From: Phyllobates terribilis
Taxonomy: Eukaryota
Length of the DNA stretch: 64,000 nt
Direction of reading: 5' to 3'
Assembly (NCBI RefSeq): GCF_046119375.1
Contig: NW_027362763.1
Location: forward strand, 382,540,001-382,604,000
In this document: piece by piece, positions 1-56,826 of the stretch
Layout: each line of letters begins with the position of its first letter
How positions within the stretch are numbered: the first letter of the stretch is position 1
Translations under genes and position numbers: made by a program
The notes under the pieces: generated by a model
Told to the model about the DNA's origin: nothing
The model's database searches: none
What the model saw: only the letters and a program-made list of their open reading frames with translations

Positions 1-144
1 CGCTCTGCGCTGCTCGGTTGCCAAGCGCCCGGGGAACGCGGGGAGGGCTGAGCTTGGAAACACAGACCATAAGGCCAGAGTAGCGGAGCCGACGAGCTGA
101 TCGACTTTTTTCTCCGCATCTTACAGCTGCACATAATGCCTGGA

Positions 145-280
145 AGGGCGGGGCTTACCGTTGCTTAGTTACCAGTGGACAGAAACAGTCCGAACGAAGC
201 CGTGGATTGCTTGGCGCTCAAACCTGGCGCTTACCTGACGTCACTAGCGCCCCCTATCAGAGGCGTGCAGTGTGATTGGC
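145..280 (+). promoter_or_regulatory. CpG-rich promoter of the CEP43-like gene: GC box, RFX X-box, full CRE, inverted CCAAT
   Basis: GGGCGGGG at 146-153. GTTGCTTAGTTAC at 160-172 (reverse complement GTAACT-A-AGCAAC fits GTNRCY-N-RGYAAC). TGACGTCA at 236-243. ATTGG at 275-279. All lie within 190 nt upstream of the ATG at 333. Confidence 0.6.
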
Positions 281-332
281 TGCGCTCGATGAGCTCGGCA
301 ATCACCAGGGCTGTGACTGGAGCCGCTCCGAG

Positions 333-1415
333 ATGTCTGCGGCGGAGGAGGACACGGAGCTCCGGGATCTCCTGATCCACACGCTGGAGAATAATGGCGT
401 CCTGAACAAGATCAAAGCCGAGCTGCGGGCGTCCGTGTTCCTGGCGCTGGAGGAGCAGGAGGAGAGTAAGCCGGCGCTCATCAACGAGCGGCTGCGGCAG
501 TTCCTGGCCACCAGCGATGGCCGCCTGCTCGCCTGCCTGCTCACCGACTTTCTGCAGCACTTCCACCTGGACTTCACCCTCGCCGTGCTGCAGCCCGAGG
601 CCTGCCTGCCCAGCACTCCCGACCAGCGCGCGTCCGCCGCCCGAGAGCTGGGGCTGTCTGTATCGGAGGCGCCGCTGCTCCTGGAGCTGCTGAGACTCCG
701 CCGTCAGAGAGAGGCGGCTGTGCCGCAGGAGCTGCCCCTGGAGCGCACCGAGCAGGCGCAGGCCCGGTACCGGCAGAGGGTCGGCCCCGGGGGGGAGCTC
801 GGGCAGCCGGAGCTGCGGGCGCTGCTGCTGGAGCTCTGTCCTCACTTCCACCGGGGCATGCTGGACACCTACATCACCGAGCAGCTGGCGGGGCTGAGCG
901 GCGTCATAGACGAGCAGCGCTTCCTGGCCCTGTACCGGGGGCTCTTCCTCCACTGCAGGAGTGTGGTAGTCGGCGACTACACGGTCAGCGGCCCGCAGCC
1001 CAGCCTGCAGCTGGACGATGAGGACGACCTAGAAGGTGACTCTTTCTTTGATGACCCTATCCCCAAGCCTGAGAGAACCTATGGCTGGAAGGAGGAGGTC
1101 CACCCTGGAGCCACACACTCACAGGGCTCCCTCTCCGGGTCACGTAAGGGCAGTGACCAGGACCGAGATGGCTCGCTGAGGTCCACCTCCGAGAAGATGG
1201 CCTCTCTGGAGATCGGGGCTGCTCAGGAGGAGGACTACATGGATGACTTCCACAGCAGCAGCCAGAAGAGTGAGGCCAGTATTGGAGAAGACCTGGAGGA
1301 GGAGCTGTCTGTGGACGAGCTGACCGCTAGTGACCACAAGCTGGAGGAGCTCACGCTGGACAACTCCATCTCCCAGCTGAGCGATGTGGCGGACTACCTG
1401 GAGGACGTCTCCTGA
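333..1415 (+). CDS. CEP43: Intronless CEP43/FGFR1OP (FOP)-like centrosomal protein, 360 aa, probable retrogene
   Basis: The N-terminus MSAAEEDTELRDLLIHTLENNGVLNKIKAELRASVFLALEEQE...DGRL...FLQHFHLDFTLAVLQPE matches the FOP LisH/dimerisation domain. EDDLEGDSFFDDPIPKPERTYG and the C-terminal SQLSDVADYLEDVS match FOP. The ORF is uninterrupted from ATG 333 to TGA 1413-1415. The track's 276 start is a TTG and is not used. Confidence 0.9.
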   Translation: MSAAEEDTELRDLLIHTLENNGVLNKIKAELRASVFLALEEQEESKPALINERLRQFLATSDGRLLACLLTDFLQHFHLDFTLAVLQPEACLPSTPDQRASAARELGLSVSEAPLLLELLRLRRQREAAVPQELPLERTEQAQARYRQRVGPGGELGQPELRALLLELCPHFHRGMLDTYITEQLAGLSGVIDEQRFLALYRGLFLHCRSVVVGDYTVSGPQPSLQLDDEDDLEGDSFFDDPIPKPERTYGWKEEVHPGATHSQGSLSGSRKGSDQDRDGSLRSTSEKMASLEIGAAQEEDYMDDFHSSSQKSEASIGEDLEEELSVDELTASDHKLEELTLDNSISQLSDVADYLEDVS

Positions 1416-1644
1416 TGCCGTCTGGTTTCCTATCAGAGACAACACACTGGGCATCCCTGGCAGAGGAGAGATGCCCCCTGCTCTATGGTTGGAGTGGTGG
1501 TTAGAAGATGTTGCAGAACTAAACTTCTAATTCAGGCTTCCTGTACTGTGCCCAGCCGGCCCTGCTCCATGTCTGCCCATCACTATTAGTCATATGTGCA
1601 GCAGGTCACACAACATATTTTTGCTATAGAGACTTGGGGGTAAA

Positions 1645-1650
1645 AATAAA
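1645..1650 (+). terminator. Candidate polyadenylation signal of the CEP43-like gene
   Basis: AATAAA 230 nt after the stop codon. A second AATAAA is at 1921-1926. Confidence 0.45.
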
Positions 1651-1899
1651 ATATTTTACACATTTATGGCAGCATTGGTTTAGTTGTCAGGCGTTACATA
1701 CAAGCATTAGTAGCATGATGTGAGGGTTATTTCTCCGCCACTGGGCAAAGAACACATTGGTTCTACACTGCTGGTAGTCAGCGGGGCTTTTTGGGGGGGT
1801 ATTTTCAGGCATGCAATGCTTCCTGGTCGCCTACTGAAAGTTGACAGTTCTGACCAGCACAATGATCCGGTCCAAATTTTGAGACTGCAGAGGTGGCTG

Positions 1900-1913
1900 G
1901 TAACCTAGGCAAC
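1900..1913. promoter_or_regulatory. Consensus RFX X-box
   Basis: GTAACCTAGGCAAC matches GTNRCC-N-RGYAAC-type consensus. Confidence 0.4.
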
Positions 1914-2640
1914 ATGGTAAAATAAAACTCCTATACTTGATAGTGTAGTGATTTTAATTAGGGGTAACTAATTGCTACATTAAAGGGGTAAAATTGCAAA
2001 GTGCTTGTGAAAGCAAACAGTTTTGCAATTTTATCCCTCATTACAAATCTTTATGTATAATCACTTGCCCTGTAATTACCTTCTGTAGGTGTTGTTCCCC
2101 TTTATCTGAATATTTATGGTATTGTTCTGTTCAGTTGGTCATATGATGACCCTCCCTGGGAGTTACATGGCTATATGTTCTCTTCTGAGGGGGCTTCATC
2201 TCAGGCGATAGAACTGCCTGTATGATGCAATGTACCACACATGCTCTATGGAGGGGGGCATTATTACAGTGGAGGGAGATGGTTACATAGCTGGTGTCTC
2301 ACCATTCTAATGTTGGAGATGGCAGTTCGTACTCATCATCTATTAGCTAATATAGGAGAGGATAATCCGTGTCACCCCAGCAGACAGTGATGCTATTTAC
2401 TCTCCATATGATGCATCATAAAACTGATAGAAGCAGAGTGACATTCAAGATGGTATTTAGAAGTGCATGCAAGGAAGCACACCATGTGTAATAGTTTGTT
2501 TTGCACTTTCCACTCTACGTTTCTAATTGCCTCTTTTAAAAGCACTTTTCCAGGACTTTCATATTGATCAATCTTTAAGATGGGGCATCTATTAGGATAT
2601 GTGCATTGGAAATGGCACATGTTTGTATGTTGTGCAATGT

Positions 2641-2940
2641 AGGGCTGTGGAGTCTGTATCGAAGTCAGTATAAAATGGACCGACTCCTAAAATATATAAT
2701 AAATTGGGTACAGTAGTTCAATGTGGGGAATATTTTTTTTCATAAGAATTAGGGAAAGTTCTGAAATGTCTGTCCTATTCCCGATCTAAGGGTCTAGACT
2801 TCTAGCTGAGATGAATCTGTGCTACAGTGAATTTATCACTTAAACATGAGCCATGTATGAGGGAGTCGTGGGGTCGGAGTTGGAGGCGGCATCATGGAAA
2901 TTGAGGAGTTGGAGGTTTGGCTTACCGATTCACATGGCTG
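2641..2940 (+). mobile_element. Non-autonomous DNA element (MITE) of the CAGGGCTGTGGAGTCGG-TIR family, degenerate copy
   Basis: Starts AGGGCTGTGGAGTC. The body is the reverse complement of 53582-53897 and matches 54927-55150. Confidence 0.75.
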
Positions 2941-4689
2941 TGAATGGCACTATACGAGCTCTACTATTTGTGTAGGAGAGAGTAAGCAGTACTAAACACG
3001 GCCACTGCACAATCTACGGAACTGTGCCACTTCTGGTGCACTACGAGCCCTTTAATCAAATGATCAATGAGAGACGAGCCCCCCTCCACCATGGTTCTCA
3101 TATGGGTGACCTGTTGTCGTTCAGGTGGTCCGTGTAGGACTCATTAATATTTTAGAAACATTGCAGTGTAAGAGCCAGAAACTAGTCAGACACTGCTGGA
3201 TTTTTCATACAGAAGACAGAGATGGTTTATTCCCATTTCTTGCCTTTCTCTCATCGCTGTTTACCGAGCACTGAATAAGCATTACATATGCATATTAGGT
3301 AGTACTAACAGTTCTTCCTCCTCTGGACCCACTGACCCTGTAATTACTGGTAGGAAGCCGGAGCTAGTGGGTCCTAGCAGAGCCATCTCGGCTCTGAAGT
3401 TCTAGCAGGAGGCTGGTGTCCTGTAACTGGGACTTAATTGTTTTATTGCAGATTTCCCCTGTAACTGCAGCTGGCATTTAAGTGTTGAAATGCCGCTCCA
3501 TGGGCTTTCATGACCTTAGTGGGGGAATGTGTATATTAATAACTTCTACAGAAAAAAGGGGAACTCAAATTTAAAATATTTTTAAAGAAAACCGGACATT
3601 AGACCTAGTTTATCCTCTGGATATGCCATACCTATCTTTCTGCAGAACTCTAAGCATTTTGTTATCTATCAAACTTGCCAATGCCTGACAGAGGGTCCGT
3701 GAAAAAAAAATTGAACCTCACTCAGCTGCCATCCATGTGTCTTCCAAATGTAATGTTTTGGGTAGGGAAAGTTTAGAAAGTTATTTTTTTTTATTTCATT
3801 TTTTATATCAGATGAAGAAAAAAAGCAAAGTCACATTGAGAGTAAAAATGGGTAGAGGACCAATCAGAATCAGCACATTTGTGGTTGTGTTATTTTATAT
3901 CAATAAACACACTGACATGTGAATGAGGGCTATATCTGCACCTAGTTCAGGCGTCTATTGTACGAATGTGTTTGCCTTTCATGGATAGAACACCCACCTA
4001 TTATAGTCTATGGGGCTGTACATATGTCTTTTTTGTGAACATTGGGGCAAATTCATCAAAGCTGGTGTAAAAGCTTTGAAAAGTTGCAAAATTTCTAAGC
4101 AACTCCCACTTGGGTAGAATTTTTTTTTACTTTTAGCACTTTCATGCCAGTCTGAATGGGCAAAGCTGGGAGATGCCGGGGAGGGGGGGATGAGGGCATG
4201 ACCATGTCTGCCTGTCAAATTCATATAAAGTGGCAGCGATTTTAGAATAAGTTTGGGATCAGCAGCTACGGTCACATTGTAGTCTTCAGAAGGAAGATTT
4301 GTTTTCCCTCTTGGCCAGACCATTTCCCTCAAACTGCTGTAGGTATTGCAGGCTTCACAAATTGCATTTTACATTTCCTTTCCCTCGTACTAAGACCTCA
4401 CTCAGACGTCCGTTTTTCAGGTATGCTTTCCATCCATGCTTTTCACAGGACACATACCTATTATAGTCTGGAGTCGTTTGTGTTTACTTGCGGGTTATGT
4501 GCCGCTAAAAATCTTGGAGACCTTTCATGCCCACTCTCCCTATTCTCAGCCTGCGTCCTGTAGCTGACTGCTAGGTCACTGTACCAGGAGTCACCTGTCA
4601 GTCAGATATAGGAGGCAGGTAGCGGGAGGGGGAGAGGGCAGGAGAGCTGAAAGGTCAAGGCCTGTCCCACTGCACTTACAACTCATTAA

Positions 4690-5106
4690 ATCTGCCACCA
4701 GGTTTTGCTTCTCCATCTCAATGTTTGCCCCATTGAAAATAAAAACACTTATACCTACAGTGCCAGCGCTGTTGGCACTCCACATTCCCGGGGCTCGTGA
4801 GCGGTTATGACGTGAGCCCTGCTCTCAATCAGCGCTGGCGTCACTATCCTCACCTTCAGATGTGAAGAAGTGAGAGCTGCGGCTGGTCGATCACTTCCTC
4901 CTGATTTCTTATGTCCGAAGGCGGGGACAGGGACTCCAGCGCTGATTGAGGACAGGGCTCATGTGAAGTAACAACCGCTGACGAGCCCCGGGAACGCGAG
5001 TCTCGACACAGCTGGAATGGCGCCAACAAGGGAGGAGAGTGTGTTTTTATTTTTAACAGGTGGAAACATTCAGATAAAAAGGCTGACCTTGTAGTGGACA
5101 ATCCCT
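4690..5106. mobile_element. Internally palindromic T2/Kolobok-type MITE
   Basis: CCCGGGGCTCGTGAGCGGTT...CTCAATCAGCGCTGG is mirrored by CCAGCGCTGATTGAG...AACCGCTGACGAGCCCCGGG. Ends GACAATCCCT followed by TTAA. The left end is degenerate. Confidence 0.5.
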
Positions 5107-5845
5107 TTAAATACCACTACCTGTGCCCATATTCGCGGCAGCTGCAGCTTACAACACATCACATGTAATCCTCCTTTGATACGACATCTTACACCAGTAA
5201 AAGGAGAATCTTCTCTGGTTTCTACATCTGCATAAAATAAAATCACTTATCCTAAGCAAGAGATCCAGCATGGTGGCTGCCATGGGCACCTCCTTACTAA
5301 TGTTGGTCTCCTGGGTTATTGCATGTAGCCGATATTGCAATTTCTTTTTTAACACACATCACCGATGCGGATCTCAGTCACTACCTATGAAACTAGATTT
5401 TGTGACAGGCTAGAGACTTTCAAAGGCCAGTACATCACTCCGTAACTAGGACTTAGTCCCACATTGGTGTCTTTGACCTGAATGGCTATGTCTATTGCAT
5501 AATATATTGTGCCAAAGTAACAAAAACATTCCTCAAAATAGTAAAAAGATCCCTTCAAATATTAGATATAAACCTATCGTGACTCAGAAGGAGTAAACCT
5601 GATCCAAAAAGTAAACTAGATCAAAAATGTATTATTCAATACAAAATACATCAATGAGTACAGAACTATCAGAAAACATAAACATGTCAGATACACAATA
5701 TCGGACAAAGATACAGGAAAAACTATTAACCCTGAATAGATATGAGGTGGTGAATAATATGCAGTTATATACAGAGAGCCATGTAGTACATAAATGTAAG
5801 TAACTATATTATAGAGGATCAATAAATAATATGCCCATCAATATA

Positions 5846-6425
5846 CAATCGTGGCTGAAAGTGTTGGCACCTTTGAAATTGTTCCAGAAAATTATGTATT
5901 TCTCCCAGAAAATTGCAATTACACATGCTTTGTTATACATGTGTAAATTGGAACAACACAAAAAAACAGAGAGAAAAAGACAAATTGGACATAATTTCAC
6001 ACAAAACCCCAAAAATGTGCAGGACAAAATTGCTGACACACTCAACTTAATATTTGGTTGCACACCCTTTGGAATAAATACGGTAACTTCAATCAGTCGC
6101 TTCCTATAACCATCAATAAGCTTCTTCCACCTCACTACTGGGATTTTGAACCACTCTTATTCTGCAAACTGCTCCAGGTCTCCCATATTTGAAGGATGTC
6201 TGCTACCAACAGCAATTACAGATCTCTCCACCGCTGTTCAATGGGATTTATATCTGGAGTCATTGCTGGCCACGTCAGAACTCTCGTTTTCTTCTATTTT
6301 TGGGTTCTTCTTGAAGTATGTTTGGGGTCATTGTCCTGCTGGAAGACCCAGACCTAGGACGCAAACCCAGCTTTCTGCCACTGGGCACTACATTGCGACC
6401 CAAAATCCTTTGGTAATCTTCCGAT
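5846..6425 (-). mobile_element. Tc1-family transposon fragment (TIR plus degenerate transposase 3' end)
   Basis: TA followed by CAATCGTGGCTGAAAGTGTTGGCACC. The minus-strand frame gives RWKKLIDGYRKRL. Same family as 38767-40133. Confidence 0.8.
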
Positions 6426-8224: not shown

Positions 8225-10890
8225 GGGGACCCCGGAGCAGTGGCTGATGGGACACTGGAGTGGTGGCTGGTGGGATCCCGGAGTGATGGGACACTGGAGT
8301 GGTGGCTGGTGGGACCTTGGAGCAGTGGCTGGTGGGACACTGAAGAGGTGGCTGGTGGGACCTTGGAGTGGTGGCTGGTGGGATCCCGGAGTGATGGGGC
8401 ATTGGAGCAGTGGTTGGTGGGACCTTGAAGCGGTGGGACACTGGAGTGGTGGCTGGTGGAACCTTGGAGCGGTGGGACACTGGAGTGGTGGCTGGTCGGA
8501 TCCCGGAGTGATGGGACACTGGAGTGGTGGCTGGTGGGACACTGGAGAGGTGGCTGGTCGGGTCCCGGAGTGATGGGACCTTGGAGCGGTGGCTGGTGGG
8601 ACACTGGAGCGGTGGCTGGTGGGATCCTGGAGTGATGGGACACTGGAGTGGTGGCTGGTAGGACCTTGGAGCAGTGGCTGGTGGGACACTGGAGAGGTGG
8701 CTGGTGGGACCTTGGGATAGTGGCTGGTGGGATCCCGGAGTGATGGGACACGAGTGGTGGCTGGTGGGATCCCGGAGTGATGGCTGGTGGGACCTTGGAG
8801 CAGTGGCTGGTGGGACCTTGGAGTGGTGGCTGGTGGGATCGCGGAGTGATGGGACATTGGAGCGGTGGTTGGTGGGATTTTTGAGCGGAGGGACCTTGGA
8901 GTGGTGGCTGGTGGGATCCCGGAGTGATGGGACATTGGAGCGGTGGTTGGTGGGATCCCGGAGTGATGGGACACTGGAGTGGTGGCTGGTGGGATCCCGG
9001 AGTGATGGGACACTGGAGTGGTGGCTGGTGGGACCTTGGAGCAGTGGCTGGTGGGACCTTGGAGTGGTGGCTGGTGGGACCTTGGAGTGGTGGCTGGTGG
9101 GATCGCGGAGTGATGGGACATTGGAGCGGTGGTTGGTGGGATTTTTGAGCGGAGGGACCTTGGAGTGGTGGCTGGTGGGATCCCGGAGTGATGGGACATT
9201 GGAGCGGTGGTTGGTGGGATCCCGGAGTGATGGGACACTGGAGTGGTGGCTGGTGGGATCCCGGAGTGATGGGACACTGGAGTGGTGGCTGGTGGGACCT
9301 TGGAGCAGTGGCTGGTGGGACACTGAAGAGGTGGCTGGTGGGACCTTGGAGTGGTGGCTGGTGGGATCCCGGAGTGATGGGGCATTGGAGCAGTGGTTGG
9401 TGGGACCTTGAAGCGGTGGGACACTGGAGTGGTGGCTGGTGGAACCTTGGAGCGGTGGGACACTGGAGTGGTGGCTGGTCGGATCCCGGAGTGATGGGAC
9501 ACTGTAGTGGTGGCTGGTGGGACACTGGAGAGGTGGCTGGTCGGGTCCCGGAGTGATGGGACCTTGGAGCAGTGGCTGGTGGGACACTGGAGAAGTGGCT
9601 GGTGGGACACTGGAGCGGTGGCTGGTGGGATCCTGGAGTGATGGGACACTGGAGTGGTGGCTGGTAGGACCTTGGAGCAGTGGCTGGTGGGACACTGGAG
9701 AGGTGGCTGGTGGGACCTTGGGATAGTGGCTGGTGGGATCCCGGAGTGATGGGACACGAGTGGTGGCTGGTGGGATCCCGGAGTGATGGCTGGTGGGACC
9801 TTGGAGCAGTGGCTGGTGGGACCTTGGAGTGGTGGCTGGTGGGATCGCGGAGTGATGGGACATTGGAGCGGTGGTTGGTGGGATTTTTGAGCGGAGGGAC
9901 CTTGGAGTGGTGGCTGGTGGGATCCCGGAGTGATGGGACATTGGAGCGGTGGTTGGTGGGACCTTGGAGCGGTGGGACACTGGAGTGGTGGCTGGCGGGA
10001 CCTTGGAGCGGTGGCTGGTGGGACCATGGAGCGGTGGCTTGTGGGATCCCGGAGTGATGGGACACTGGAGTAGTGACTGGTGGGATCCCGGAGTGATGGG
10101 ATACTGGAGTGGTGGGACCTTGGAGCCGTGGGACACTGGAGTGGTGGCTGGTGGGACCTTGAAGCGGTGGGATACTGGAGAGGTGGCTAGTTGGATCCCG
10201 GAGTGATGGGACACTGGAGCAGTGGCTGGTGGGACCTTGGAGCAGTGGCTGGTGGGACCTTGGAGCGGTGGCTGGTGGGACCTTGGAGTGGTGGCTGGTG
10301 GGATCTCGGAGTGATGGGACATTAGAGCGGTGGTTGGTGGGACCTTGGAGCAGTGGCTGGTGGGACACTGGAGAGGTGGCTGGTGGGATCCCGGAGTGAT
10401 GGGACACTGGAGCGGTGGCTGGTGGGATCCCGGAGTGATGGGACACTGGAGTGGTGGCTGGTGGCATCTTGGAGCAGTGGGACACTGGAGAGGTGGCTGG
10501 TGGGATCCCAGAGTGAAGGGACACTGGAGTGGTGGCTGGTGGGACCTTGGAGCAGTGGCTGGTGGGACCTTGGAGCAGTGGCTGGTGGGACCTTGGAGTA
10601 GTGGCTGGTGGGACCTTGGAGTGGTGGCTGGTGGGATCCCGCAGTGATGGGACATTGGAGTGGTGGCTGGTGGCATCTTGGAGCAGTGAGACACTGGAGA
10701 GGTGGCTGGTGGGATCCCGGAGTGAAGGGACACTGGAGTGGTGGCTGGTGGGACCCTGGAGCAGTGGCTGGTGGGATCCCGGAGTGATGGGACTGGGACC
10801 TTGGAGAGGTGGCTGGCGGGACCTTGGAGTGGTGGCTGGTGGGATCCCGGAGCAGTGGGACACTGGAGTGGTGGCAGGTGGGACCCCAGG
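8225..10890. repeat. G-rich compound minisatellite (23-bp and 16-bp subunits) with a ~1-kb higher-order duplication
   Basis: Interspersed GGAGTGGTGGCTGGTGGGACCTT-type and GGAGTGATGGGACACT-type units. The marker TGAAGAGG recurs at 8341 and 9324 (offset 983). GGGACACGAG recurs with offset 1006. Confidence 0.95.
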
Positions 10891-11360: not shown

Positions 11361-11748
11361 CTACAGGTCACTTAACCCCTTCAGGACCAGGTCTGTTCTC
11401 CTCAGTGACCGTATGACTGCGTGTGACTTGTGTTTTTCATGCCCCCGTTGTTGGATGGTGTTGCCCCTCATTAGCTGCTGTGTGGTAATGCCCCGGTCCC
11501 ATCTCCGCCTCTGTGTTCCCTGATGATCAGAGAATGTTTCCTGTGGATCCAGAAAGGTTTTCTAAACTTTGTGATCTATATAATTAACTCTTTATCTGAG
11601 AGGAGGACGGGAAACCTCTGCTGTTATGTCTTTTTTCTGGTCTTCAGTGCTTTTTACAGGTCAGGTTTCCCTTAAACAGCTGGGATCAGCGCTGCTTATA
11701 CAGGCAGATGCAGCTGCTGAGCCCGCACTTGACAGGCGCTGTGCATGT

Positions 11749-14066
11749 ATGAGGACACCATATGGCTGTGCCCGGGTGATGTCCTCATCCAGACACCTGA
11801 CCACTGCAGCCAAACTGTCTTTCATGGCTTATGTATGAGGACACCATATGGCTGTGCCCGGGTGATGTCCTCATCCAGACACCTGACCACTGCAGCCAAA
11901 CTGTCTTTCATGGCTTATGTATGAGGACACCATATGGCTGTGCCCGGGTGATGTCCTCATCCAGACACCTGACCACTGCAGCCAAACTGTCTTTCATGGC
12001 TTATGTATGAGGACACCATATGACTGTGCCCGGGCGATGTCCTCATCCAGACACCTGACGACTGCAGCCAAACTGTCTTTCATGGCTTATGTATGAGGAC
12101 ACCATATGGCTGTGCCCGGGTGATGTCCTCATCCAGACACCTGACCACTGCAGCCAAACTGTCTTTCATGGCTTATGTATGAGGACACCATATGACTGTG
12201 CCCGGGCGATGTCCTCATCCAGACACCTGACGACTGCAGCCAAACTGTCTTTCATGGCTTATGTATGAGGACACCATATGGCTGTGCCCGGGTGATGTCC
12301 TCATCCAGACACCTGACGACTGCAGCCAAACTGTCTTTCATGGCTTATGTATGAGGACACCATATGGCTGTGCCCGGGTGATGTCCTCATCCAGACACCT
12401 GACCACTGCAGCCAAACTGTCTTTCATGGCTTATGTCTGAGGACACCATATGACTGTGCCCGGGCGATGTCCACATCCAGACACCTGACCACTGCAGCCA
12501 AACTGTCTTTCATGGCTTATGTCTGAGGACACCATATGACTGTGCCCGGGCGATGTCCACATCCAGACACCTGACCACTGCAGCCAAACTGTCTTTCATG
12601 GCTTATGTCTGAGGACACCATATGACTGTGCCCGGGCGATGTCCACATCCAGACACCTGACCACTGCAGCCAAACTGTCTTTCATGGCTTATGTATGAGG
12701 ACACCATATGACTGTGCCCGGGCGATGTCCACATCCAGACACCTGACCACTGCAGCCAAACTGTCTTTCATGGCTTATGTCTGAGGACACCATATGACTG
12801 TGCCCGGGTGATGTCCTCATCCAGACACCTGACCACTGCAGCCAAACTGTCTTTCATGGCTTATGTATGAGGACACCATATGACTGTGCCCGGGCGATGT
12901 CCACATCCAGACACCTGACCACTGCAGCCAAACTGTCTTTCATGGCTTATGTCTGAGGACACCATATGACTGCCCGGGCGATGTCCACATCCAGACACCT
13001 GACGACTGCAGCCAAACTGTCTTTCATGGCTTATGTCTGAGGACACCATATGACTGCCCGGGCGATGTCCACATCCAGACACCTGACCACTGCAGCCAAA
13101 CTGTCTTTCATGGCTTATGTATGAGGACACCATATGACTGTGCCCGGGCGATGTCCACATCCAGACACCTGACCACTGCAGCCAAACTGTCTTTCATGGC
13201 TTATGTCTGAGGACACCATATGACTGTGCCCGGGCGATGTCCACATCCAGACACCTGACCACTGCAGCCAAACTGTCTTTCATGGCTTATGTATGAGGAC
13301 ACCATATGACTGTGCCCGGGCGATGTCCACATCCAGACACCTGACCACTGCAGCCAAACTGTCTTTCATGGCTTATGTATGAGGACACCATATGACTGTG
13401 CCCGGGCGATGTCCTCATCCAGACACCTGACCACTGCAGCCAAACTGTCTTTCATGGCTTATGTATGAGGACACCATATGGCTGTGCCCGGGTGATGTCC
13501 TCATCCAGACACCTGACCACTGCAGCCAAACTGTCTTTCATGGCTTATGTATGAGGACACCATATGACTGTGCCCGGGTGATGTCCACATCCAGACACCT
13601 GACCACTGCAGCCAAACTGTCTTTCATGGCTTATGTATGAGGACACCATATGACTGTGCCCGGGTGATGTCCTCATCCAGACACCTGACCACTGCAGCCA
13701 AACTGTCTTTCATGGCTTATGTATGAGGACACCATATGACTGTGCCCGGGCGATGTCCTCATCCAGACACCTGATGACTGCAGCCAAACTGTCTTTCATG
13801 GCTTATGTCTGAGGACACCATATGACTGTGCCCGGGTGATGTCCTCATCCAGACACCTGACCACTGCAGCCAAACTGTCTTTCATGGCTTATGTATGAGG
13901 ACACCATATGACTGTGCCCGGGCGATGTCCTCATCCAGACACCTGACGACTGCAGCCAAACTGTCTTTCATGGCTTATGTATGAGGACACCATATGGCTG
14001 TGCCCGGGTGATGTCCTCATCCAGACACCTGACCACTGCAGCCAAACTGTCTTTCATGGCTTATGT
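11749..14066. repeat. Tandem array of 27 copies of an 86-bp unit (two copies are 84 bp)
   Basis: Unit ATGAGGACACCATATGRCTGTGCCCGGGYGATGTCCWCATCCAGACACCTGACSACTGCAGCCAAACTGTCTTTCATGGCTTATGT. 25x86 + 2x84 = 2318 bp, which equals the span. Confidence 0.97.
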
Positions 14067-14890: not shown

Positions 14891-15631
14891 GCTGCCATAG
14901 ATCAGTGTATAAGATTTGGGATCCATGTCTTTTTCTACTGATATGTTGTAACACAACCACACAACCCCACCTTCCCTCCCTCTCCTCCCCCACACACCCA
15001 CACTTTGCATATAACACTTAACTGTGCCGATGGGGGAGCCACGGGGGCTTTTCCTGGCAGTATGGGTTCTCTGGGGCACCTTGGTCACACCCTACTCTGG
15101 TGTTGATAGTTAATGCGAAGCACTATCAACCGACTGTTTTTTTTTTTTTAATTTATTTATTTATTTTTTTTTAGAAGGGGGTTAAAAATGCCCCAAAAAC
15201 ATTTTGTGAATGCAGAGCAAAAGTTATCCATGCGTAAACCTGAGTAATTTGTGACATAAGGACAAATGTGCCCAATAAATACTATCATAGAAACCTATGG
15301 GATCTGCACAGTATAGAAGAAAGTAGAATATCTGGCTGTGTAACTAGAGGTGGCCGATAGGGAGGCTGTGATCTGCATGGTATAGAGATCTAGTGAGGCC
15401 ATCGCTGGATTATTATGTTGTGTTCTGGAGACTTAGAGATATGAGGGGTGTGAGGTCGCTGCTGTAACTACTATTACAACTGATCGCTATATACATGACC
15501 TACAGATTAACATTGCTGGCTGCAAGACATGGCTATGACTATTTTTTAAGCTACACAATGAACATCTTTTAACTTGTTTTCTTTCTGAATTTGCAGGGTT
15601 GCATTGGTTAATCACACTCTTGGAGTTGAAG

Positions 15632-15782
15632 ATGCAGTTCACCAGGAATCAGAGACATCAGAGATTAACTGGAGATAGGAAGGGCGATCAATACCTGTTC
15701 AGTCTTCAGTTCTATCAGCTTCCACCAACCGAAAACATTTCTCTTACAGAGTTTGAGACCTTTGCCATTGAGAGACTTAAAC
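15632..15782 (+). CDS. PRIM2: PRIM2 first coding exon (exon starts at 15597 including 5' UTR)
   Basis: MQFTRNQRHQRLTGDRKGDQYLFSLQFYQLPPTENISLTEFETFAIERLK matches the PRIM2 N-terminus. Acceptor TTGCAG ends at 15596 and donor GTGAGT starts at 15783 (phase 1). Confidence 0.93.
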
Positions 15783-16589
15783 GTGAGTTACTTCTTGAAA
15801 TGTTTTCTTTCTAGGATGTGTTCTTTAAATGTCTTTTTATGCATGTCTACAATTAGTCATATAGCCATGTCATCATGCCCCTGTGGGTATGAGTGTCATG
15901 AATTGCACATCTCTGCCCCCCTGACAATATGCAGTCAGTCAGGTGTGCGCTCCCCCGCTTCATCAGCCCACCACACATGGCCAGGGATGCAGCGGTGACG
16001 TAGGACACAGCCAGCCATTACACAGTAAGCAGGGTGTACGCGCCCTTCCTTCATTGGCTCTCTAAATGCTGGCTGAGTCCGAAGTCATTGCTGCCCCTCT
16101 GAGCATGTGCACTGTGCCTATGAAGGATGATGTACACCCAGTTTACCGTGCATTGTCAGGGAGGCACCGATTTTCAAAGAGCCATCAGTGTCACTGCTCT
16201 TGCAGTTCATATTACTCACACCCAGGGACATGATTAGTCTGGGGAAAGCAACGCCCCCACGACTAGTCCCCCAGCAATTAGCACTGAGCCACCTCAGTTA
16301 TAACATATTTTTTTTCAGTACTTATTAGTTCTCAGGTTTTGCTGAAAGACTGCAGTTCTTCAGATAGAGCTAGTGATTAGGGTCTATGCTACTTCCTATT
16401 AGACAGTGTTTAGCAGGAATGTTATCCCATGTTACTTGTTGGGGAATGTTATTTTTGATAATTACTCATGGTTTTCTGTATGGTATGATGTGTGTCTGGG
16501 GATTGCTTGGGGCTCTTCCAATTTTCCTCCTTTCCTTCACTCAGACTATGGTAATTTCTGGATCAGATACATTTGCAATGTTTAGAGAT

Positions 16590-19839: not shown

Positions 19840-22800
19840 GGATCCGCCCTTCAAGCTAAAAAGGGTGGCGTGCCTCTGCGCCTCAGTGGTTTCCTGTCCT
19901 TGACTGGGGAGCCTCCTGGACGGCGGCAGAAAGAAGAAAAGATTCCCAGACCTGGGCCATCCGACCTCAAGCAGGACACAGTCTTGGCTGCGGCGGTTTC
20001 GGGCTCTATTGGGTCTCGTCCGTCGGACGTAGCGTGGGCTGCGGCACCGTCACAGCATGGTGGCCGGCAGCTGCGCCTCCCAGCCATGTGTCACATCGCA
20101 CCCTGATGATGCGTGCTGGGACCTTTTAACCGGATCAAGAATTCCGGGGGGGCGATAGCGGAAGAGGAGTGCGCTGGCCAGGGGCTCATATAGGTCTCAA
20201 TGGAGTCGGAGCAGCCCTCTTTAATACAGCCGCAACTGCTGCAGGAGCCAGAGCTACAACCTCAGCGTTCCCAACCGGGGACAAGCCTATGGGAGAAACG
20301 CCCTCAGGAAAAGCAGTAGCCTCGGTCAGATGGTGGCCGCTCAAGTGGAGGGCACAGGACCACGGAGTCCAGGAGTCGGCACAGCTCCAGCAGGATTGAG
20401 GATTCTGCAGTCTCGAAAGAAGAGATTTTGGACGACATTCTGCTTCCTTTTGTGGTACCCCTTTATATCCTCTGAGTGGTGAGTGATTTGTGTGAAAGTC
20501 CAGCCTGTTAATGAGGTTTTCTTTCTCTCTCTATCTCTCTGCCCTATGGTAGGAGGTACCCCAAAAAATGTGCTACTAAATCTAACCACAGAGCCTGCGC
20601 TTTGTGTGGTTAGGGGTTAGCCAGAACGTGGCATAAAAGGTTGTGTCAATCTTGTATTGACGAGACGGTTTCAGAAGAAAATGCTAATTTTTCCTCCAAT
20701 CTGAGGTCCCTCATATAACAGAGGTGTAAAACTCCTTGAGATCCCTATTCCACACATAGAACAGCACGACGCAAAAGATCTCCCACTTTGTCAGTTATGG
20801 AGTCAGATGAAGGGGTCTTGCAGGAGTCTTCCTCGGGCTCTTCCTCTTCTGAAAGTGACTCAGGAACCAGTCATTGCTTTCCACTAAATGAAGTAGATAA
20901 TCTGGTGAAAGCCGTAAGATCTACCATGGGGCTAGTTGACTGCAGGACCAAGAAATCGGTGCAACACATAATGTTTGGGATTCTAGATCAGAGAAGAAAA
21001 CGTAAAATCTTTCCCATCAATGATAGAGTGCCGTAACTCATTAACAAGGAATGGGAGAAACCGGAGAAAAAGGGTTCCCTTCATTCTGCCTTTAAGAGGA
21101 AGTACCCCTTTGAGGAGGAAGGAACGACTTCTTGGGGTAAGGCCCTCAAGTTAGATGTCGCTATATCAAAAGCCTCAAAAAAGTCTTGCCTTCCATTTGA
21201 GGGTACAGGGATGCTAAAAGACCCCCTAGATAGGAAGATCGATACTTCCCTAAAAGGCACATGGGAGTCGTCAGCCGGGGCCTTAAAGCCAGCCATAGCG
21301 GTAACGTGTACAGCCAGATCACTAATGATCTGGCTGAGTAAGCTAGAGGTTCAGCTAAAAGATAATGCCCCGAGAATCCATGTTAGCAACACTCCCGGTA
21401 ATGAAGGGAGCAGCGGCCTTCCTGTCAGACGCCTCAGCCGCTTCAGCAAGGTTAGCGGCCATATCAGCGGCATTGTCCAACTCAGGACGCAGAGACGTGT
21501 GGTTAAAATGCTGGCTAGGAGGCATGCAGGCAAAGGTGAAATTGTGTTCTCTCCCTTGTGAAGGGGAATACCTATTCGGTACAGCCCTAGACAACATCCT
21601 CGAGAACGCAGGAGATCAGAAAAAAGACTTCACAAAAACCCCCTTTTCCTCTTTCAAGCAGCCCTTTCGGAGGAAGAAGTTTAACCGAAAGATTATGTTT
21701 AGGGAACAGGACGAGTGGGATGACCGATCCAAAAAGTATAGGGGGTTTCTCTTCGGTGGTCCCTCCCAGGAGCGCAAGAGACCCCCCAAATGACTGTTTC
21801 CCAGGTGGGGGGGGGGGAGGCTCTCTCTCTTCCTTCCAGCCTGGGAAAAAATCTCCTCCAGTGTCTGGATCCTCTGCCTAATAAAATCGGGGTTGAGGCT
21901 AGAATTTCTGAAACGCCCACCAGACAAGTTTGTGATGACTGACTGCCCCATGAGTATCCCCGCGAGAACATCTGCCCTCCCCAATACCCGTCACGGTCGC
22001 ATACATAAATCATCAGGGAGGCACTCGCTCCAGAGCCCGATGCAGATTTCAAGCCGGATATTTTTCCTGGTGGAAACAAATTTCCGGTCACTGTCCGCCT
22101 CGCACATCAATGGAAAGTGCAGCGTCAAACCAGACAACTACGACAGGGAGTGGTCCCTAAAAATGTCGGTGTACGACCAGATTGTGGCCATGTGGGGTTG
22201 TCCAGAGATCGATCTTTTCGCTACCAGGCTAAACTGGAAGCTGGAAAGGTTTTGCTCTATGAACTAGAGAGAAAATCCCCAAGAGGTGAATGCTTTTCCA
22301 ATCTACTGGGACTTCCGTCTGGCATATGCCTTTCCTCAGATCTGTCTGATTCCAGCGGTACTAAGAAAGATCAGACAGGACGGAGTAAGAGTAGTTCTGA
22401 TAGCCCCCTTCTGGCCCAAGAGACCTTAGTTCTTCTGGCTGAAAAATATGTCGGTCACGGAACCCTGGATCCTTCCAGAGATTTCGGACCTTATGTCCCA
22501 GTGATCCATTTTCCATCCTCAAGTGACATGCTTGCATTTAACAGCCTGGAACTTGAGAGGTCGTTACTAGAGAGTAAAGGATTCTCTTCAAATCTGGTTT
22601 ACACCCTACTAAGCAGTAGAAAACCAATTACAACAAGAATATGCGGTAGGACCTGGAAAAATTTTGTCATCCACGGGGTCCTCTCCAGAAGGGAAGGTGC
22701 CCCTCAGAACAGTCTGAGTTCCTCCAGAAAGGGAGGGAACGGGGGCTTTCGTTTAGTACCCTAAAGATTCAGGTTTTAGCCCTGGGGGCACTTTATAACT

Positions 22801-35836: not shown

Positions 35837-35942
35837 GTAAGTGTGTGTGTCCACTTATATTCAGAAGCCCCTCTACATTATTACACATAGGAATCTAGCA
35901 TTATGTATTTTAATAAGTGTTTTCTATATTTAATATCTGCAG

Positions 35943-36034
35943 GCCTCAAAGGATGAAATGAGTGATAAAGTATACGACGAGCGAAGAAAAGATCACATCT
36001 CTCACTTTATATTGCGTCTTGCGTACTGCCAGTC
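35943..36034 (+). CDS. PRIM2: PRIM2 third coding exon
   Basis: [30 protein letters not shown](S); 92 nt; CTGCAG acceptor and GTAAGT donor; follows a 106-nt intron. Confidence 0.95.
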
Positions 36035-36150
36035 GTAAGTGAATAATTTATTTCCAGTACTAATGATTGTTGAAACAATTTTCTTATGTTTGCAGTTTTT
36101 AAAAATTGTTCTGCTGATTTAGAAGGAGGATCTGTAGGCGGGGTACATGT

Positions 36151-36411
36151 GTTATTTATTTATTTTACTCCCTTATATAGCACCATTAATTCCACAGCGC
36201 TTTACAGACATTATGGTCACTGTCTCCATTAGGGCTCACAATCTAGATTCCCTATCAGTATGTCTTTGGAGTGTGGGAGGAAACCGGAGAACCCGGGGGA
36301 AACCCGCACAAACACGGGGAGAACATACAAACTCCTTGCAGATGTTGTCCTTGGTGGGATTTGAACATAGGACCCCAGCGCTGCAAGGCTGCAGTGCTAA
36401 CCACTGAGCCA
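36151..36411 (-). mobile_element. tRNA-derived V-SINE
   Basis: The minus strand has an A box (TGGCTCAGTGG), a B box (GTTCAAATCC), the V-domain GGAGTTTGTATGTTCTCCCCGTG...GGTTTCCTCCCAC, and an L2-like tail TGTAAAGCGCTG...AATAA. Confidence 0.88.
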
Positions 36412-51692: not shown

Positions 51693-51841
51693 NNNNNNNN
51701 NNNNNNNNNNNNNNNNNNNNNNNNNNNNNNNNNNNNNNNNNNNNNNNNNNNNNNNNNNNNNNNNNNNNNNNNNNNNNNNNNNNNNNNNNNNNNNNNNNNN
51801 NNNNNNNNNNNNNNNNNNNNNNNNNNNNNNNNNNNNNNNNN
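51693..51841. other. Assembly gap (149 N)
   Basis: Run of N. Confidence 1.
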
Positions 51842-54726: not shown

Positions 54727-54858
54727 NNNNNNNNNNNNNNNNNNNNNNNNNNNNNNNNNNNNNNNNNNNNNNNNNNNNNNNNNNNNNNNNNNNNNNNNNN
54801 NNNNNNNNNNNNNNNNNNNNNNNNNNNNNNNNNNNNNNNNNNNNNNNNNNNNNNNNNN
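54727..54858. other. Assembly gap (132 N)
   Basis: Run of N starting 4 nt into the intron. Confidence 1.
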
Positions 54859-55232: not shown

Positions 55233-56826
55233 CAGTGAAGGAAATAAATATTTCCTTTGCTGTTTTTGTAAGTTTACCCAATGGCAAACACATGAACAGT
55301 CTATAATTTTAAGGGTAGGTTAATTTTAACATTGAGAGATAGAATATCCAAAAAAAAAATCAAGAAAATTACATTGTATACATTTATTTGCATTTTGCAG
55401 TGAGAAATAAGTATTTGATTCCTCTGGCAAACAACACTTAATACTTGGTGGCAAAACCCTTGTTGGCAAGCACAGCAGTCAAATATTTTTTGTAGTTGAT
55501 GATGAGGGTTGCGCACATATCAGGGGGAATTTTGGTCCACTCCTGTTTGCAGATCATCTCTAAATCATTAAGATTTTGAGGCTGTCTCTTGGCAACTCGG
55601 AGCTTCAACTCCCTCCATAAGTTTTCTATGGGATTAAGGTCTGGAGACTGGCTAGGCCACTCCATGACCTTACTGTGCTTCTTTTTGAGACACTCCTTTG
55701 TTGCCTTGGCTGAATGTTTTGGGTCATTGTCTTGCTGGAAGACCCAGCCACGACCCACTTTTAATGTCGTTGCGGAGGGAAGGAGGTTGTCACTCAGGAT
55801 TTTACGGTACATGGCTCCATCCATTCTCCCATTGATGCAGTGAAGTAGTCCTGTGCCTTTAGCAGAGAAACACCCCCGAAACATAATGTTTCCACCTCCA
55901 TGCTTGACAGTGGGGACGGTGTTCTTTGGGTTATAGGCAGCATTTCTCTTCCTCCAAACATGGTGAGTTGAGTTAATGCCAAAGAGCTCAATTTTTGTCT
56001 CATCTGACCACAGCACCTTCTCCCAATAACTCACAGAATCATCCAGATGTTCATTGCCAAACTGCAGACGGGCCTGCGCATGTGTCTTCTTGAGCAGGGG
56101 GACCTTGCGGGCACTGCAGGATTTTAAACCTTTAAGGCGTAATGTGTTACCAATGGTTTTCTTGGTGACTGTGGTCCCAACTGCCTTGTGATCATTAACA
56201 AGTTCCCCCCGTATAGTTTTAGGCTGATCTCTCACCTTCCTCATGATGAAGGATATCCCACGAGGTGAGATTTTGCATGGTGCCCCAGATTGATGCCAAT
56301 TGACAGTCATTTTGTATTTCTTCCATTTTCTTACTATTACACCAACATTTGTCTCCTTCTCACCCAGCGTCTTACTTATGTTTTTGGAGCCCATTCCATC
56401 TTTTTGCAGGTCTATGATCTTGTCCCTGATATGCTTAGAAAGCTCTTTGGTCCTGCCCATGTTGTAGAGGTTAGAGTCTGACTGATTAATTAAGTCTGTG
56501 GACAGGAGTCTTTTATACAGGTGACTATGTAAGACAGCTGTCTTTAATGCAGGTAACGAGTTGATTAGGAGCGTCTAACTGGTCTGTAGGAGCCAGAACT
56601 CATAATGGCTTGTAGGGGATCAAATAATTATTATTTCTCACTGCAAAATGCAAATAAATGTATCTAATTTATATAATGTGATATTCTTGATTTTTTTTTT
56701 TTTTTCTTTTTTTGGAAATTCTATCTCTCTCTCTCAACTACCCTTAAAATTATAGACTGTTCATGTGTTTGCCAGTGGGTAAACTTACAAAAGCAGCAAG
56801 GGATCAAATAATTATTTCCTTCACTG
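55233..56826 (-). mobile_element. Full-length Tc1 transposon with ~200-bp IR/DR-type TIRs
   Basis: CAGTGAAGGAAATAA... at 55233 and ...TTATTTCCTTCACTG then TA at 56826. An inner direct repeat CAGTGAGAAATAAGTATTTGA lies near 55398. The left TA reads CA. Confidence 0.93.
55438..56460 (-). CDS. Tc1 transposase, 340 aa, uninterrupted, DD34E
   Basis: Paired-like N-terminus, [32 protein letters not shown]. There are 34 residues between the second D and the E. Confidence 0.92.

What the first reader, a model, noticed from the sequence alone, without database searches (positions are those of the whole stretch)
333..1415. Intact intronless CEP43/FOP paralogue outside the canonical locus: probable functional retrogene
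Seen: a single-exon 360-aa ORF with the FOP LisH N-terminus and the conserved acidic C-terminal motif, no stops or frameshifts, CpG-rich, with no visible poly(A) or TSD scar. Known: vertebrate CEP43 is multi-exon and in human lies at 6q27, not next to PRIM2. Inference: an old retrocopy kept under selection, with conserved interaction motifs and a rewritten middle, possibly a specialised centriole or cilium paralogue.
Basis: partly seen in the sequence, partly recalled or inferred. Interest (0 to 1): 0.75.

Follow-up and report, generated by a model that had tools for sequence, protein, structure and literature searches.

The report
Frog CEP43: ancient replacement retrogene
This intron-free gene is real and conserved, but it is the frog's ordinary and apparently only CEP43 (a centriole and cilium protein): an mRNA-derived copy that seems to have replaced the original many-exon gene in the ancestor of all 'modern' frogs, landing beside the RAB23 promoter.

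Summary
Window 333-1415 (+) is an intact 360-aa single-exon ORF with the FOP dimerisation/LisH domain and the conserved acidic C-terminus. It lies in a CpG island about 14 kb upstream of PRIM2.

It is a retrogene, but not a lineage-specific extra paralogue.
- Orthologues with an intronless coding sequence occur in all three major neobatrachian branches: Hyloidea, Myobatrachoidea and Ranoidea. In the three species where a neighbour could be read, they sit head-to-head with RAB23.
- They form one 100/100 clade on a long stem.
- Pelodytes and Xenopus laevis have the multi-exon gene (about 15 coding pieces over 45-53 kb).
- No parent-type CEP43 protein of any neobatrachian turned up in two database searches. 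NCBI already names these intronless genes 'centrosomal protein 43'. So the copy most likely replaced its parent (an 'orphan' retrogene).

Selection is purifying overall (dN/dS 0.17-0.36) and relaxed in the middle (0.53-0.75).

The 'rewritten middle' is a decayed EF-hand pair plus a shortened linker.

Unspliced contigs from two studies cover the gene, but they are unstranded.

The scan has found similar replacement retrogenes elsewhere in this genome.

This is a new member of a known kind, of moderate interest.

The parts
1..134 (-). Putative non-coding or first exon of RAB23, running off the window start; a highly conserved block
   Evidence: In Dendrobates tinctorius a called minus-strand Rab-family gene starts its CDS at L006:9790, which equals window 134. 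The block is 70-84% conserved in Ranitomeya, Bufo, Mixophyes and Pyxicephalus. On the minus strand it ends in a conserved splice donor (alignment A3). An X13 contig ends at 132 and continues more than 1.7 kb upstream. RAB23 identity was shown for Mixophyes and Pyxicephalus.
135..332 (.). Shared CpG-island promoter region and CEP43 5' UTR: GC box 146-154, perfect CRE TGACGTCA 236-243, inverted CCAAT 275-279
   Evidence: Motifs read from the sequence. CpG o/e is 0.9. Conserved among neobatrachians (A2). Contigs begin to fit at 234. Promoter function is inferred, not shown.
333..1415 (+). CEP43/FOP coding sequence, single exon, 360 aa plus stop
   Evidence: Collinear unspliced contigs 234-2697 in runs X1 and X2, and 234-1640 / 304-1698 in X14 / X13.
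333..719 (+). N-terminal dimerisation and centrosome-targeting domain (residues 1-129; includes FOP_dimer/LisH)
   Evidence: Pfam, PDB 2d68, AF2 helices with pLDDT 70-90, dN/dS 0.15-0.33.
738..968 (+). Degenerate EF-hand pair (residues 136-212); calcium-binding loops lost
   Evidence: Aligns with the EF-hand pair of Pelodytes, Xenopus and Pyxicephalus. No EF-hand Pfam hit here, against 27-35 bits in those species. The AF2 model has four helices with pLDDT 83-93, and Foldseek hits are calmodulin and troponin C. dN/dS is 0.53-0.75.
969..1412 (+). Disordered acidic C-terminal region with conserved short motifs (residues 234-247, 302-327, 347-360)
   Evidence: Invariant columns in A1 and A4. pLDDT below 50. 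dN/dS 0.08-0.28.
1416..1700 (+). Proximal 3' UTR with AATAAA at 1645-1650; a longer form may run to about 3986
   Evidence: Contig depth in X13 and X14 drops at 1640-1700; X1 and X2 contigs continue to 2697 and 2899-3986. Positions 1613-1707 are conserved with Bufo.
15632..15785 (+). PRIM2 first coding exon (neighbour, not part of the gene)
   Evidence: phmmer against DNA primase large subunit 8g99_C, E 8.6e-17.

Best explanation
The ORF is the functional CEP43 (FOP) gene of this dendrobatid-like frog. It descends from one retroposition of a spliced CEP43 mRNA in the stem lineage of Neobatrachia, after the split from Pelobatoidea and before Ranoidea, Myobatrachoidea and Hyloidea diverged. The copy inserted between RAB23 and PRIM2, a few hundred bases from the RAB23 start, and most likely uses that CpG-island promoter in the opposite direction. 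The multi-exon parent was then lost, so the retrogene is the only CEP43. The protein keeps the N-terminal dimerisation and centrosome-targeting domain and the acidic C-terminal motifs. From the literature on human and chicken FOP, these link it to CEP350/CAP350, EB1, microtubule anchoring and ciliogenesis. In hyloid frogs both calcium-binding loops of the central EF-hand pair are lost, though the fold seems kept, and much of the disordered linker is gone. Shown here: intron absence, shared position, monophyly, purifying selection, EF-hand decay. Inferred: retroposition as the mechanism, loss of the parent, promoter sharing, retained centriolar function.
For: Single-exon coding sequence in Ranitomeya variabilis (1050 bp/349 aa), Bufo bufo (1092/363), Rana temporaria (1209/402), Mixophyes fleayi (1338/445), Dendrobates tinctorius (1041/346) and Pyxicephalus adspersus (1293/430). 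The multi-exon gene spans 53 kb in Pelodytes and 45 kb in X. laevis, in about 15 coding pieces; the window protein maps onto 8-9 separate pieces there. All neobatrachian sequences form one clade (100/100) on a stem of 0.36, with an internal topology like the species tree. RAB23's first coding exon lies 8-9.5 kb upstream on the opposite strand in Mixophyes and Pyxicephalus, and a Rab gene start lies 211 bp from the ATG in D. tinctorius. The upstream block is conserved across the three superfamilies. It has no similarity to the parental flanks. With Pelodytes CEP43 as query, hits at 59-74% identity are all non-neobatrachian frogs, and neobatrachians appear only at 50-52%, like sharks. dN/dS is 0.17-0.36. 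Unspliced collinear contigs come from two studies.
Against: No genome-wide DNA search of this or any other neobatrachian assembly was possible, so a decayed or unannotated parent copy cannot be excluded. The parental locus and its neighbours were not identified in any frog: the 10-kb flanks of Pelodytes and X. laevis hold no called genes. So 'new locus' rests on the absence of RAB23 and PRIM2 exons there and on recalled human synteny. No poly(A) or target-site duplication remains. The contigs are unstranded and their runs are only guessed to be RNA. Three of them break at exactly 234, where the minus strand reads a perfect splice donor, so part of the signal could be antisense. Early-branching neobatrachians were not sampled.
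Confidence: 0.8

Rival explanations
1. An extra, specialised paralogue: the multi-exon CEP43 still works elsewhere in this genome, and the retrogene has taken on a narrower centriole or cilium role.
For: Accelerated protein evolution on the neobatrachian stem and in hyloids, and relaxed constraint with loss of the EF-hand loops, are what a subfunctionalised duplicate could show. The genome itself could not be searched.
Against: No second CEP43-type protein from any of about 20 neobatrachian species in two searches of 5.8 billion proteins, while every non-neobatrachian frog shows the parent type. NCBI names the intronless gene itself 'centrosomal protein 43'. No other note on CEP43 in the 773 scanned windows of this genome.
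Confidence: 0.08
2. Not a retroposition: the gene lost its introns in place (for example by recombination with a cDNA) and moved by a DNA-level rearrangement, or the RAB23-PRIM2 position is the ancestral frog position.
For: No poly(A) tail or target-site duplication survives. The neighbours of multi-exon CEP43 in frogs were not determined. The scan reports a DNA-level single-gene move in the same ancestor for gemin7.
Against: All of about 14 introns are absent at once, in one stem lineage, together with completely unrelated 5' and 3' flanks. No RAB23 or PRIM2 exon lies within 10 kb of the Pelodytes or X. laevis gene, whereas RAB23 is within 0.2-9.5 kb in neobatrachians.
Confidence: 0.08
3. A non-functional or dying retrocopy whose open frame is kept by chance.
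For: dN/dS in the middle third approaches 0.75.
Against: The frame is intact in every neobatrachian sequence recovered, about two dozen. dN/dS is 0.08-0.33 in the N and C parts at dS up to more than 1. The gene is covered by contigs at depth about 34-58.
Confidence: 0.02

Closest known systems
Vertebrate CEP43 / FGFR1OP (FOP), multi-exon gene
   Same: Collinear from first to last residue. Same FOP_dimer/LisH N-domain (fold match to 2d68), the same DSFFDDP-type motif and the same acidic C-terminal end.
   Different: No introns, a different genomic neighbourhood and promoter, both EF-hand loops destroyed, about 70 linker residues missing, GC3 of 0.85, and 2.6-4.5 times more protein change since the common frog ancestor.
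'Orphan' or replacement retrogenes (Ciomborowska et al. 2013, PMC3548309; Carelli et al. 2016, PMC4772013)
   Same: An mRNA-derived copy that survives while the parental gene is lost, so the lineage's only copy is intronless.
   Different: Those surveys concern mammals, chicken and worm. I found no paper describing this for CEP43 or for frogs.
Other replacement retrogenes this scan noted in the same genome (LZTFL1 beside NDUFB11, UHRF1, TIPRL)
   Same: Intronless, expressed and shared by Neobatrachia or by all frogs. LZTFL1 is also a cilia gene sitting head-to-head with a neighbour's promoter.
   Different: Different genes and insertion sites. Those reports are AI notes that I did not re-test.

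Membership tests
CEP43/FOP protein family | N-terminal FOP dimerisation domain with a LisH motif | tested here: met
   PF09398 at 64.6 bits (cut-off 29.4), residues 46-121. 2d68 by sequence and by fold, TM by target 0.79.
CEP43/FOP protein family | Conserved acidic C-terminal motifs and full-length collinearity with CEP43 of other vertebrates | tested here: met
   Alignments A1 and A4: invariant columns at residues 236-244, 302-319 and 347-357.
CEP43/FOP protein family | Falls inside the CEP43 tree at the position expected for its species | tested here: met
   Sister to Dendrobates tinctorius, inside Hyloidea, inside a 100/100 neobatrachian clade nested among the frogs.
Processed retrogene | Lacks all introns of a multi-exon parent | tested here: met
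   One ORF here and in six other neobatrachians. About 15 coding pieces over 45-53 kb in X. laevis and Pelodytes.
Processed retrogene | Lies at a locus different from the parent's, with unrelated flanks | tested here: inconclusive
   The flanks are unrelated to the Pelodytes flanks. RAB23 and PRIM2 are neighbours here but absent within 10 kb of the Pelodytes and X. laevis genes. The parental neighbourhood itself was not identified.
Processed retrogene | Poly(A) remnant and target-site duplications | tested here: not met
   None visible in window 1-2400. Erosion is expected for an insertion that predates the neobatrachian radiation, so this does not weigh much.
Orphan (replacement) retrogene | No functional parental copy left in the lineage | tested here: inconclusive
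   No parent-type protein of any neobatrachian in two searches. Genome-level DNA searches were not possible with these tools.
Orphan (replacement) retrogene | Purifying selection and expression of the retrocopy | tested here: met
   dN/dS 0.17-0.36. Unspliced contigs at depth 34-58 in two studies, with strand and RNA status not certain.
Calcium-binding EF-hand proteins | Canonical 12-residue loops with acidic ligands at positions 1, 3, 5 and 12 | tested here: not met
   Loop 1 reads R-V-G-P-G-G... and loop 2 has lost four residues. No EF-hand Pfam hit even at E up to 1. Only the helix-loop-helix fold is predicted.

The most novel reading that the evidence does not exclude
CEP43 is one of several essential single-copy genes, among them the cilia gene LZTFL1, that were replaced by retrocopies in the short stem lineage of Neobatrachia, each captured by a neighbour's bidirectional CpG-island promoter. 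Here the capture would tie a centriole and ciliogenesis gene to the promoter of RAB23, itself a ciliary trafficking gene. Release from the old gene structure would then have allowed loss of calcium regulation and a 3-4-fold faster protein clock in most living frog species.
Probability: 0.3. Interest if true: 0.6.

Novelty: new member of a known kind. Interest (0 to 1): 0.4.

Why it matters
CEP43/FOP is needed for microtubule anchoring, ciliogenesis and cell survival in vertebrate cells (PMC3595297 and the work cited there). In the large majority of frog species this gene appears to exist only as a retrocopy with a borrowed promoter, no introns and a dead EF-hand pair. That makes it a natural experiment on how much of the protein and of its regulation can be dispensed with.

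It also matters for annotation and orthology pipelines. The gene is labelled simply 'centrosomal protein 43', which hides a change of locus and structure.

Together with the other cases this scan noted in the same genome, it points to a possible burst of gene replacement by retroposition at the base of Neobatrachia. That could be tested genome-wide.

Tried and rejected
- Gene look-ups failed for Pelobates, X. tropicalis, Hymenochirus and Rhinatrema, because those isoforms are not on record. The CCR6-CEP43 adjacency hinted at by the Rhinatrema protein name could therefore not be checked.
- tblastx and blastn of the window against the 10-kb flanks of orthologous loci found only transposons, for example the SINE-like element at 36173-36411 and Tc1 pieces, and no shared downstream exons.
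- Pfam scans of the large downstream ORFs found no cellular genes. They gave a Tc1/mariner transposase, a weak GIY-YIG hit and a LAP2alpha-like piece.
- Short motifs recalled from memory served only as a lead to the PRIM2 exons, which were then confirmed against solved structures.
- No similarity was found between the retrogene's 5' or 3' flanks and those of the Pelodytes gene, so 'carried its own promoter' is rejected.
- Anomaloglossus 'isoform 2' (448 aa) looked like alternative splicing. It is the same single ORF with a seven-fold 13-residue repeat in the linker.
- Rfam found nothing in window 1-6000.
- Literature searches found no report of a frog CEP43 retrogene.
- The two N runs (51693-51841, 54727-54858) were left as they are.

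Full report
**Observation.** Window 333-1415 on the + strand is an uninterrupted ATG-to-TGA frame of 360 codons. Residues 46-121 match Pfam FOP_dimer (E 9.9e-18, 64.6 bits against a cut-off of 29.4) and the solved N-domain of human FOP, 2d68 (E 1.7e-15). The protein is collinear with CEP43 of sharks, gar, salamanders and frogs from the first to the last residue, including the acidic C-terminal motifs (alignment A1). The first kilobase of the window is a CpG island, with observed/expected 0.68-0.94 and GC up to 0.75.

**Neighbours.** PRIM2 lies downstream on the same strand. A stop-free stretch at 15539-15811 holds its first coding exon (E 8.6e-17 to DNA primase large subunit 8g99_C), and further exons lie at 35934-36035 and about 54.6 kb. 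The interval between the two genes holds a G-rich minisatellite and an 86-bp satellite.

Upstream, the window starts only 332 bases before the ATG. The orthologous loci show what lies there.
- In Mixophyes and Pyxicephalus, the first coding exon of RAB23 lies 8 and 9.5 kb upstream on the opposite strand. The peptide is identical in the two species, and RAB23 is the top hit at E 7e-27.
- In Dendrobates tinctorius, a called Rab-family gene starts 211 bp from the CEP43 ATG, at the position that equals window 134.
- Window 1-255 is 70-84% identical in Ranitomeya, D. tinctorius, Bufo, Mixophyes and Pyxicephalus. On the minus strand this block ends in a conserved splice donor.

I read this block as RAB23 exon 1 plus a shared, divergent CpG-island promoter. 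It contains a GC box at 146-154, a perfect CRE at 236-243 and an inverted CCAAT at 275-279. That reading is inferred, not shown.

**What the gene is.** The best database hits are proteins that NCBI already calls 'centrosomal protein 43'. They come from Dendrobates and Ranitomeya (85-86% by BLASTP; 87-90% in the alignment), Bufo (74%), Hyla, Leptodactylus and Eleutherodactylus, then Rana, Pyxicephalus, Mixophyes and other neobatrachians (51-56%). In every neobatrachian locus I could fetch, the gene range equals three times the protein length plus a stop, so the coding sequence is a single exon.

| Species | Range (bp) | Protein (aa) |
|---|---|---|
| Ranitomeya variabilis | 1050 | 349 |
| Bufo bufo | 1092 | 363 |
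| Rana temporaria | 1209 | 402 |
| Mixophyes fleayi | 1338 | 445 |
| Dendrobates tinctorius | 1041 | 346 |
| Pyxicephalus adspersus | 1293 | 430 |

Outside Neobatrachia the gene is split. It spans 53 kb in Pelodytes and 45 kb in X. laevis cep43.L, in about 15 coding pieces. The window protein maps to 8-9 separate pieces there.

In a maximum-likelihood tree of 42 proteins, all neobatrachian sequences form one clade (100/100) on a long stem of 0.36. Three unnamed transcript-derived sequences nest among them. The clade sits among the frogs, and its inner topology follows the species tree: Ranoidea against Myobatrachoidea plus Hyloidea. The window is next to D. tinctorius.

Three results point to a single retroposition in the neobatrachian stem lineage:
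- one origin for the whole clade;
- one shared insertion site;
- all introns lost at once, with flanks unrelated to those of the Pelodytes gene.

With the window protein as query, the only neobatrachian proteins found are the intronless type, one per species. With Pelodytes CEP43 as query, hits at 59-74% identity are all from non-neobatrachian frogs: Spea, Pelobates, Leptobrachium, Rhinophrynus, Ascaphus, Bombina, Xenopus and Hymenochirus. Salamanders, a caecilian and fishes follow. Neobatrachian proteins appear only at 50-52%, level with sharks. A surviving parent-type gene in any annotated neobatrachian should have ranked near the top, and none does. The retrogene therefore seems to be the sole CEP43, an 'orphan' retrogene in the sense of PMC3548309 and PMC4772013. 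The limit of this test is that it sees annotated proteins only. I could not search frog genomes at DNA level, so a decayed relic or an unannotated copy is not excluded.

**Selection and protein change.** Pairwise Nei-Gojobori dN/dS among six orthologues gave these ranges.

| Region | dN/dS |
|---|---|
| Whole gene | 0.17-0.36 |
| N-terminal domain | 0.15-0.33 |
| C-terminal third | 0.08-0.28 |
| Middle, in comparisons involving hyloids | 0.53-0.75 |

The middle is not 'rewritten'. It aligns with the EF-hand pair that non-mammalian CEP43 carries. Pfam EF-hand_7 scores fall in steps: 35 bits in Pelodytes, 27 in X. laevis, 31 in the ranoid retrogenes of Pyxicephalus and Hyperolius, 18-19 in Rana and Mixophyes, and nothing in Bufo, Hyla, Dendrobates or the window. 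In the window protein, loop 1 has lost its acidic ligands and loop 2 has lost four residues.

An AlphaFold2 model built on 43 homologues predicts four helices with short bridges at residues 136-212 (pLDDT 83-93). After FOP itself, Foldseek returns almost only calmodulin, troponin C and S100 proteins, at weak E-values. The fold is probably kept without calcium binding, but the alignment contained true EF-hands and so biases the model. Residues 212-360 are predicted disordered. About 70 linker residues present in Pelodytes are missing here. In Anomaloglossus the same linker carries a seven-fold 13-residue repeat.

Since the common frog ancestor, neobatrachian lineages have accumulated 0.6-1.0 changes per site against about 0.23 in Pelodytes or Xenopus (branch lengths). 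GC3 is 0.85 here against 0.58 in Mixophyes and Pyxicephalus. So part of the change in hyloids may be driven by base composition inside the CpG island. That is inference.

**Expression.** Sixteen public runs hold the stretch. None is on record as RNA, and the tool only guesses that some are. The contigs of four runs from two studies behave like transcripts rather than genomic DNA, because depth falls from 34-58 over the gene to near zero a few kilobases away. They are collinear with the genome, with no joint inside 234-2697. In X13 and X14, depth drops at 1640-1700, just after AATAAA at 1645-1650, which suggests a proximal poly(A) site. In X1 and X2, contigs continue to 2697 and 2899-3986.

One caveat remains open. 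Three contigs begin to fit at exactly 234 and carry 18-28 further letters that fit nothing in window 1-6000.
- At that point the plus strand has no acceptor, but the minus strand reads CAG|GTAAGC, a perfect donor. That donor is specific to this species.
- Contigs are unstranded, so an antisense transcript spliced towards RAB23, or an allele difference, cannot be told apart from a plus-strand start.
- A cluster of six A>G differences in plus-strand letters at 4782-4919 hints at plus-strand RNA downstream.

**How it most likely works.** The literature covers human and chicken FOP: satellite and centrosome targeting by the N-terminal part, the CAP350 and EB1 partnership, and roles in ciliogenesis and cell survival (PMC3595297 and its references). 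On that basis the frog protein should dimerise through its N-domain, localise to centrioles and satellites, and use the conserved C-terminal motifs for partner binding. Transcription would start from the promoter it shares with RAB23. None of this was tested in frogs.

**Comparison and novelty.** The gene is a member of the CEP43 family and is already annotated as such in related species. Two things appear to be undescribed. First, the CEP43 of all sampled neobatrachians is a retrogene at a new site that appears to have replaced its parent. Second, it shows stepwise EF-hand decay. I found no paper on either point. The kind of event is well known. This scan has also reported similar replacement retrogenes in the same genome: LZTFL1, UHRF1 and TIPRL. 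I did not re-test those notes. I therefore rate this as a new member of a known kind, of moderate interest. The interest would rise if a genome-wide test shows a burst of such replacements at the base of Neobatrachia.

Noticed in passing
window 229-240 (minus strand) and contigs of runs X1, X2, X14: Three contigs break at exactly 234 with 18-28 unplaced letters. The minus strand there reads CAG|GTAAGC, a perfect 5' splice donor that is specific to this species. This may be an antisense transcript across the CEP43 ORF spliced towards RAB23, or an allele difference.
   Followed up: partly
window 8226-10884: A 2.7-kb G-rich minisatellite (units of 23, 39 and 62 bp) with GC skew up to +0.55. It leaves long ORFs open in several frames on both strands.
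   Followed up: no
window 11745-14066: An 86-bp tandem repeat, 27 copies at 97% identity, just upstream of the PRIM2 start.
   Followed up: no
window 55441-56460 (-): An intact 340-aa Tc1/mariner-type transposase ORF (HTH_Tnp_Tc3_2, HTH_SB, DDE_3) inside a PRIM2 intron.
   Followed up: no
window 21365-21790 (+): A 142-aa ORF with a weak match to the LAP2alpha C-terminal domain (PF11560, E 4e-06, 26.9 bits). Origin unknown.
   Followed up: no
window 2600-3000: A repeat whose summed contig depth reaches 50,000-90,000 in the same runs, so it is a very abundant (transcribed?) element. No Rfam match.
   Followed up: partly
window 4782-4919: A cluster of six A>G differences (plus-strand letters) in one contig of X2, some shared with X1. 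This resembles ADAR hyper-editing of a plus-strand transcript, or an allele.
   Followed up: no
window 930 and 1420: Variation within the species. C>G at 930 changes Leu200 to Val, the residue that Dendrobates has. One run (X14) has an 18-nt insertion just after the stop codon.
   Followed up: no
window 51693-51841 and 54727-54858: Two runs of N. The second abuts a PRIM2 exon.
   Followed up: no
P0005 (Anomaloglossus baeobatrachus CEP43): The disordered linker carries a seven-fold tandem repeat of 13 residues, so this region gains as well as loses length.
   Followed up: partly
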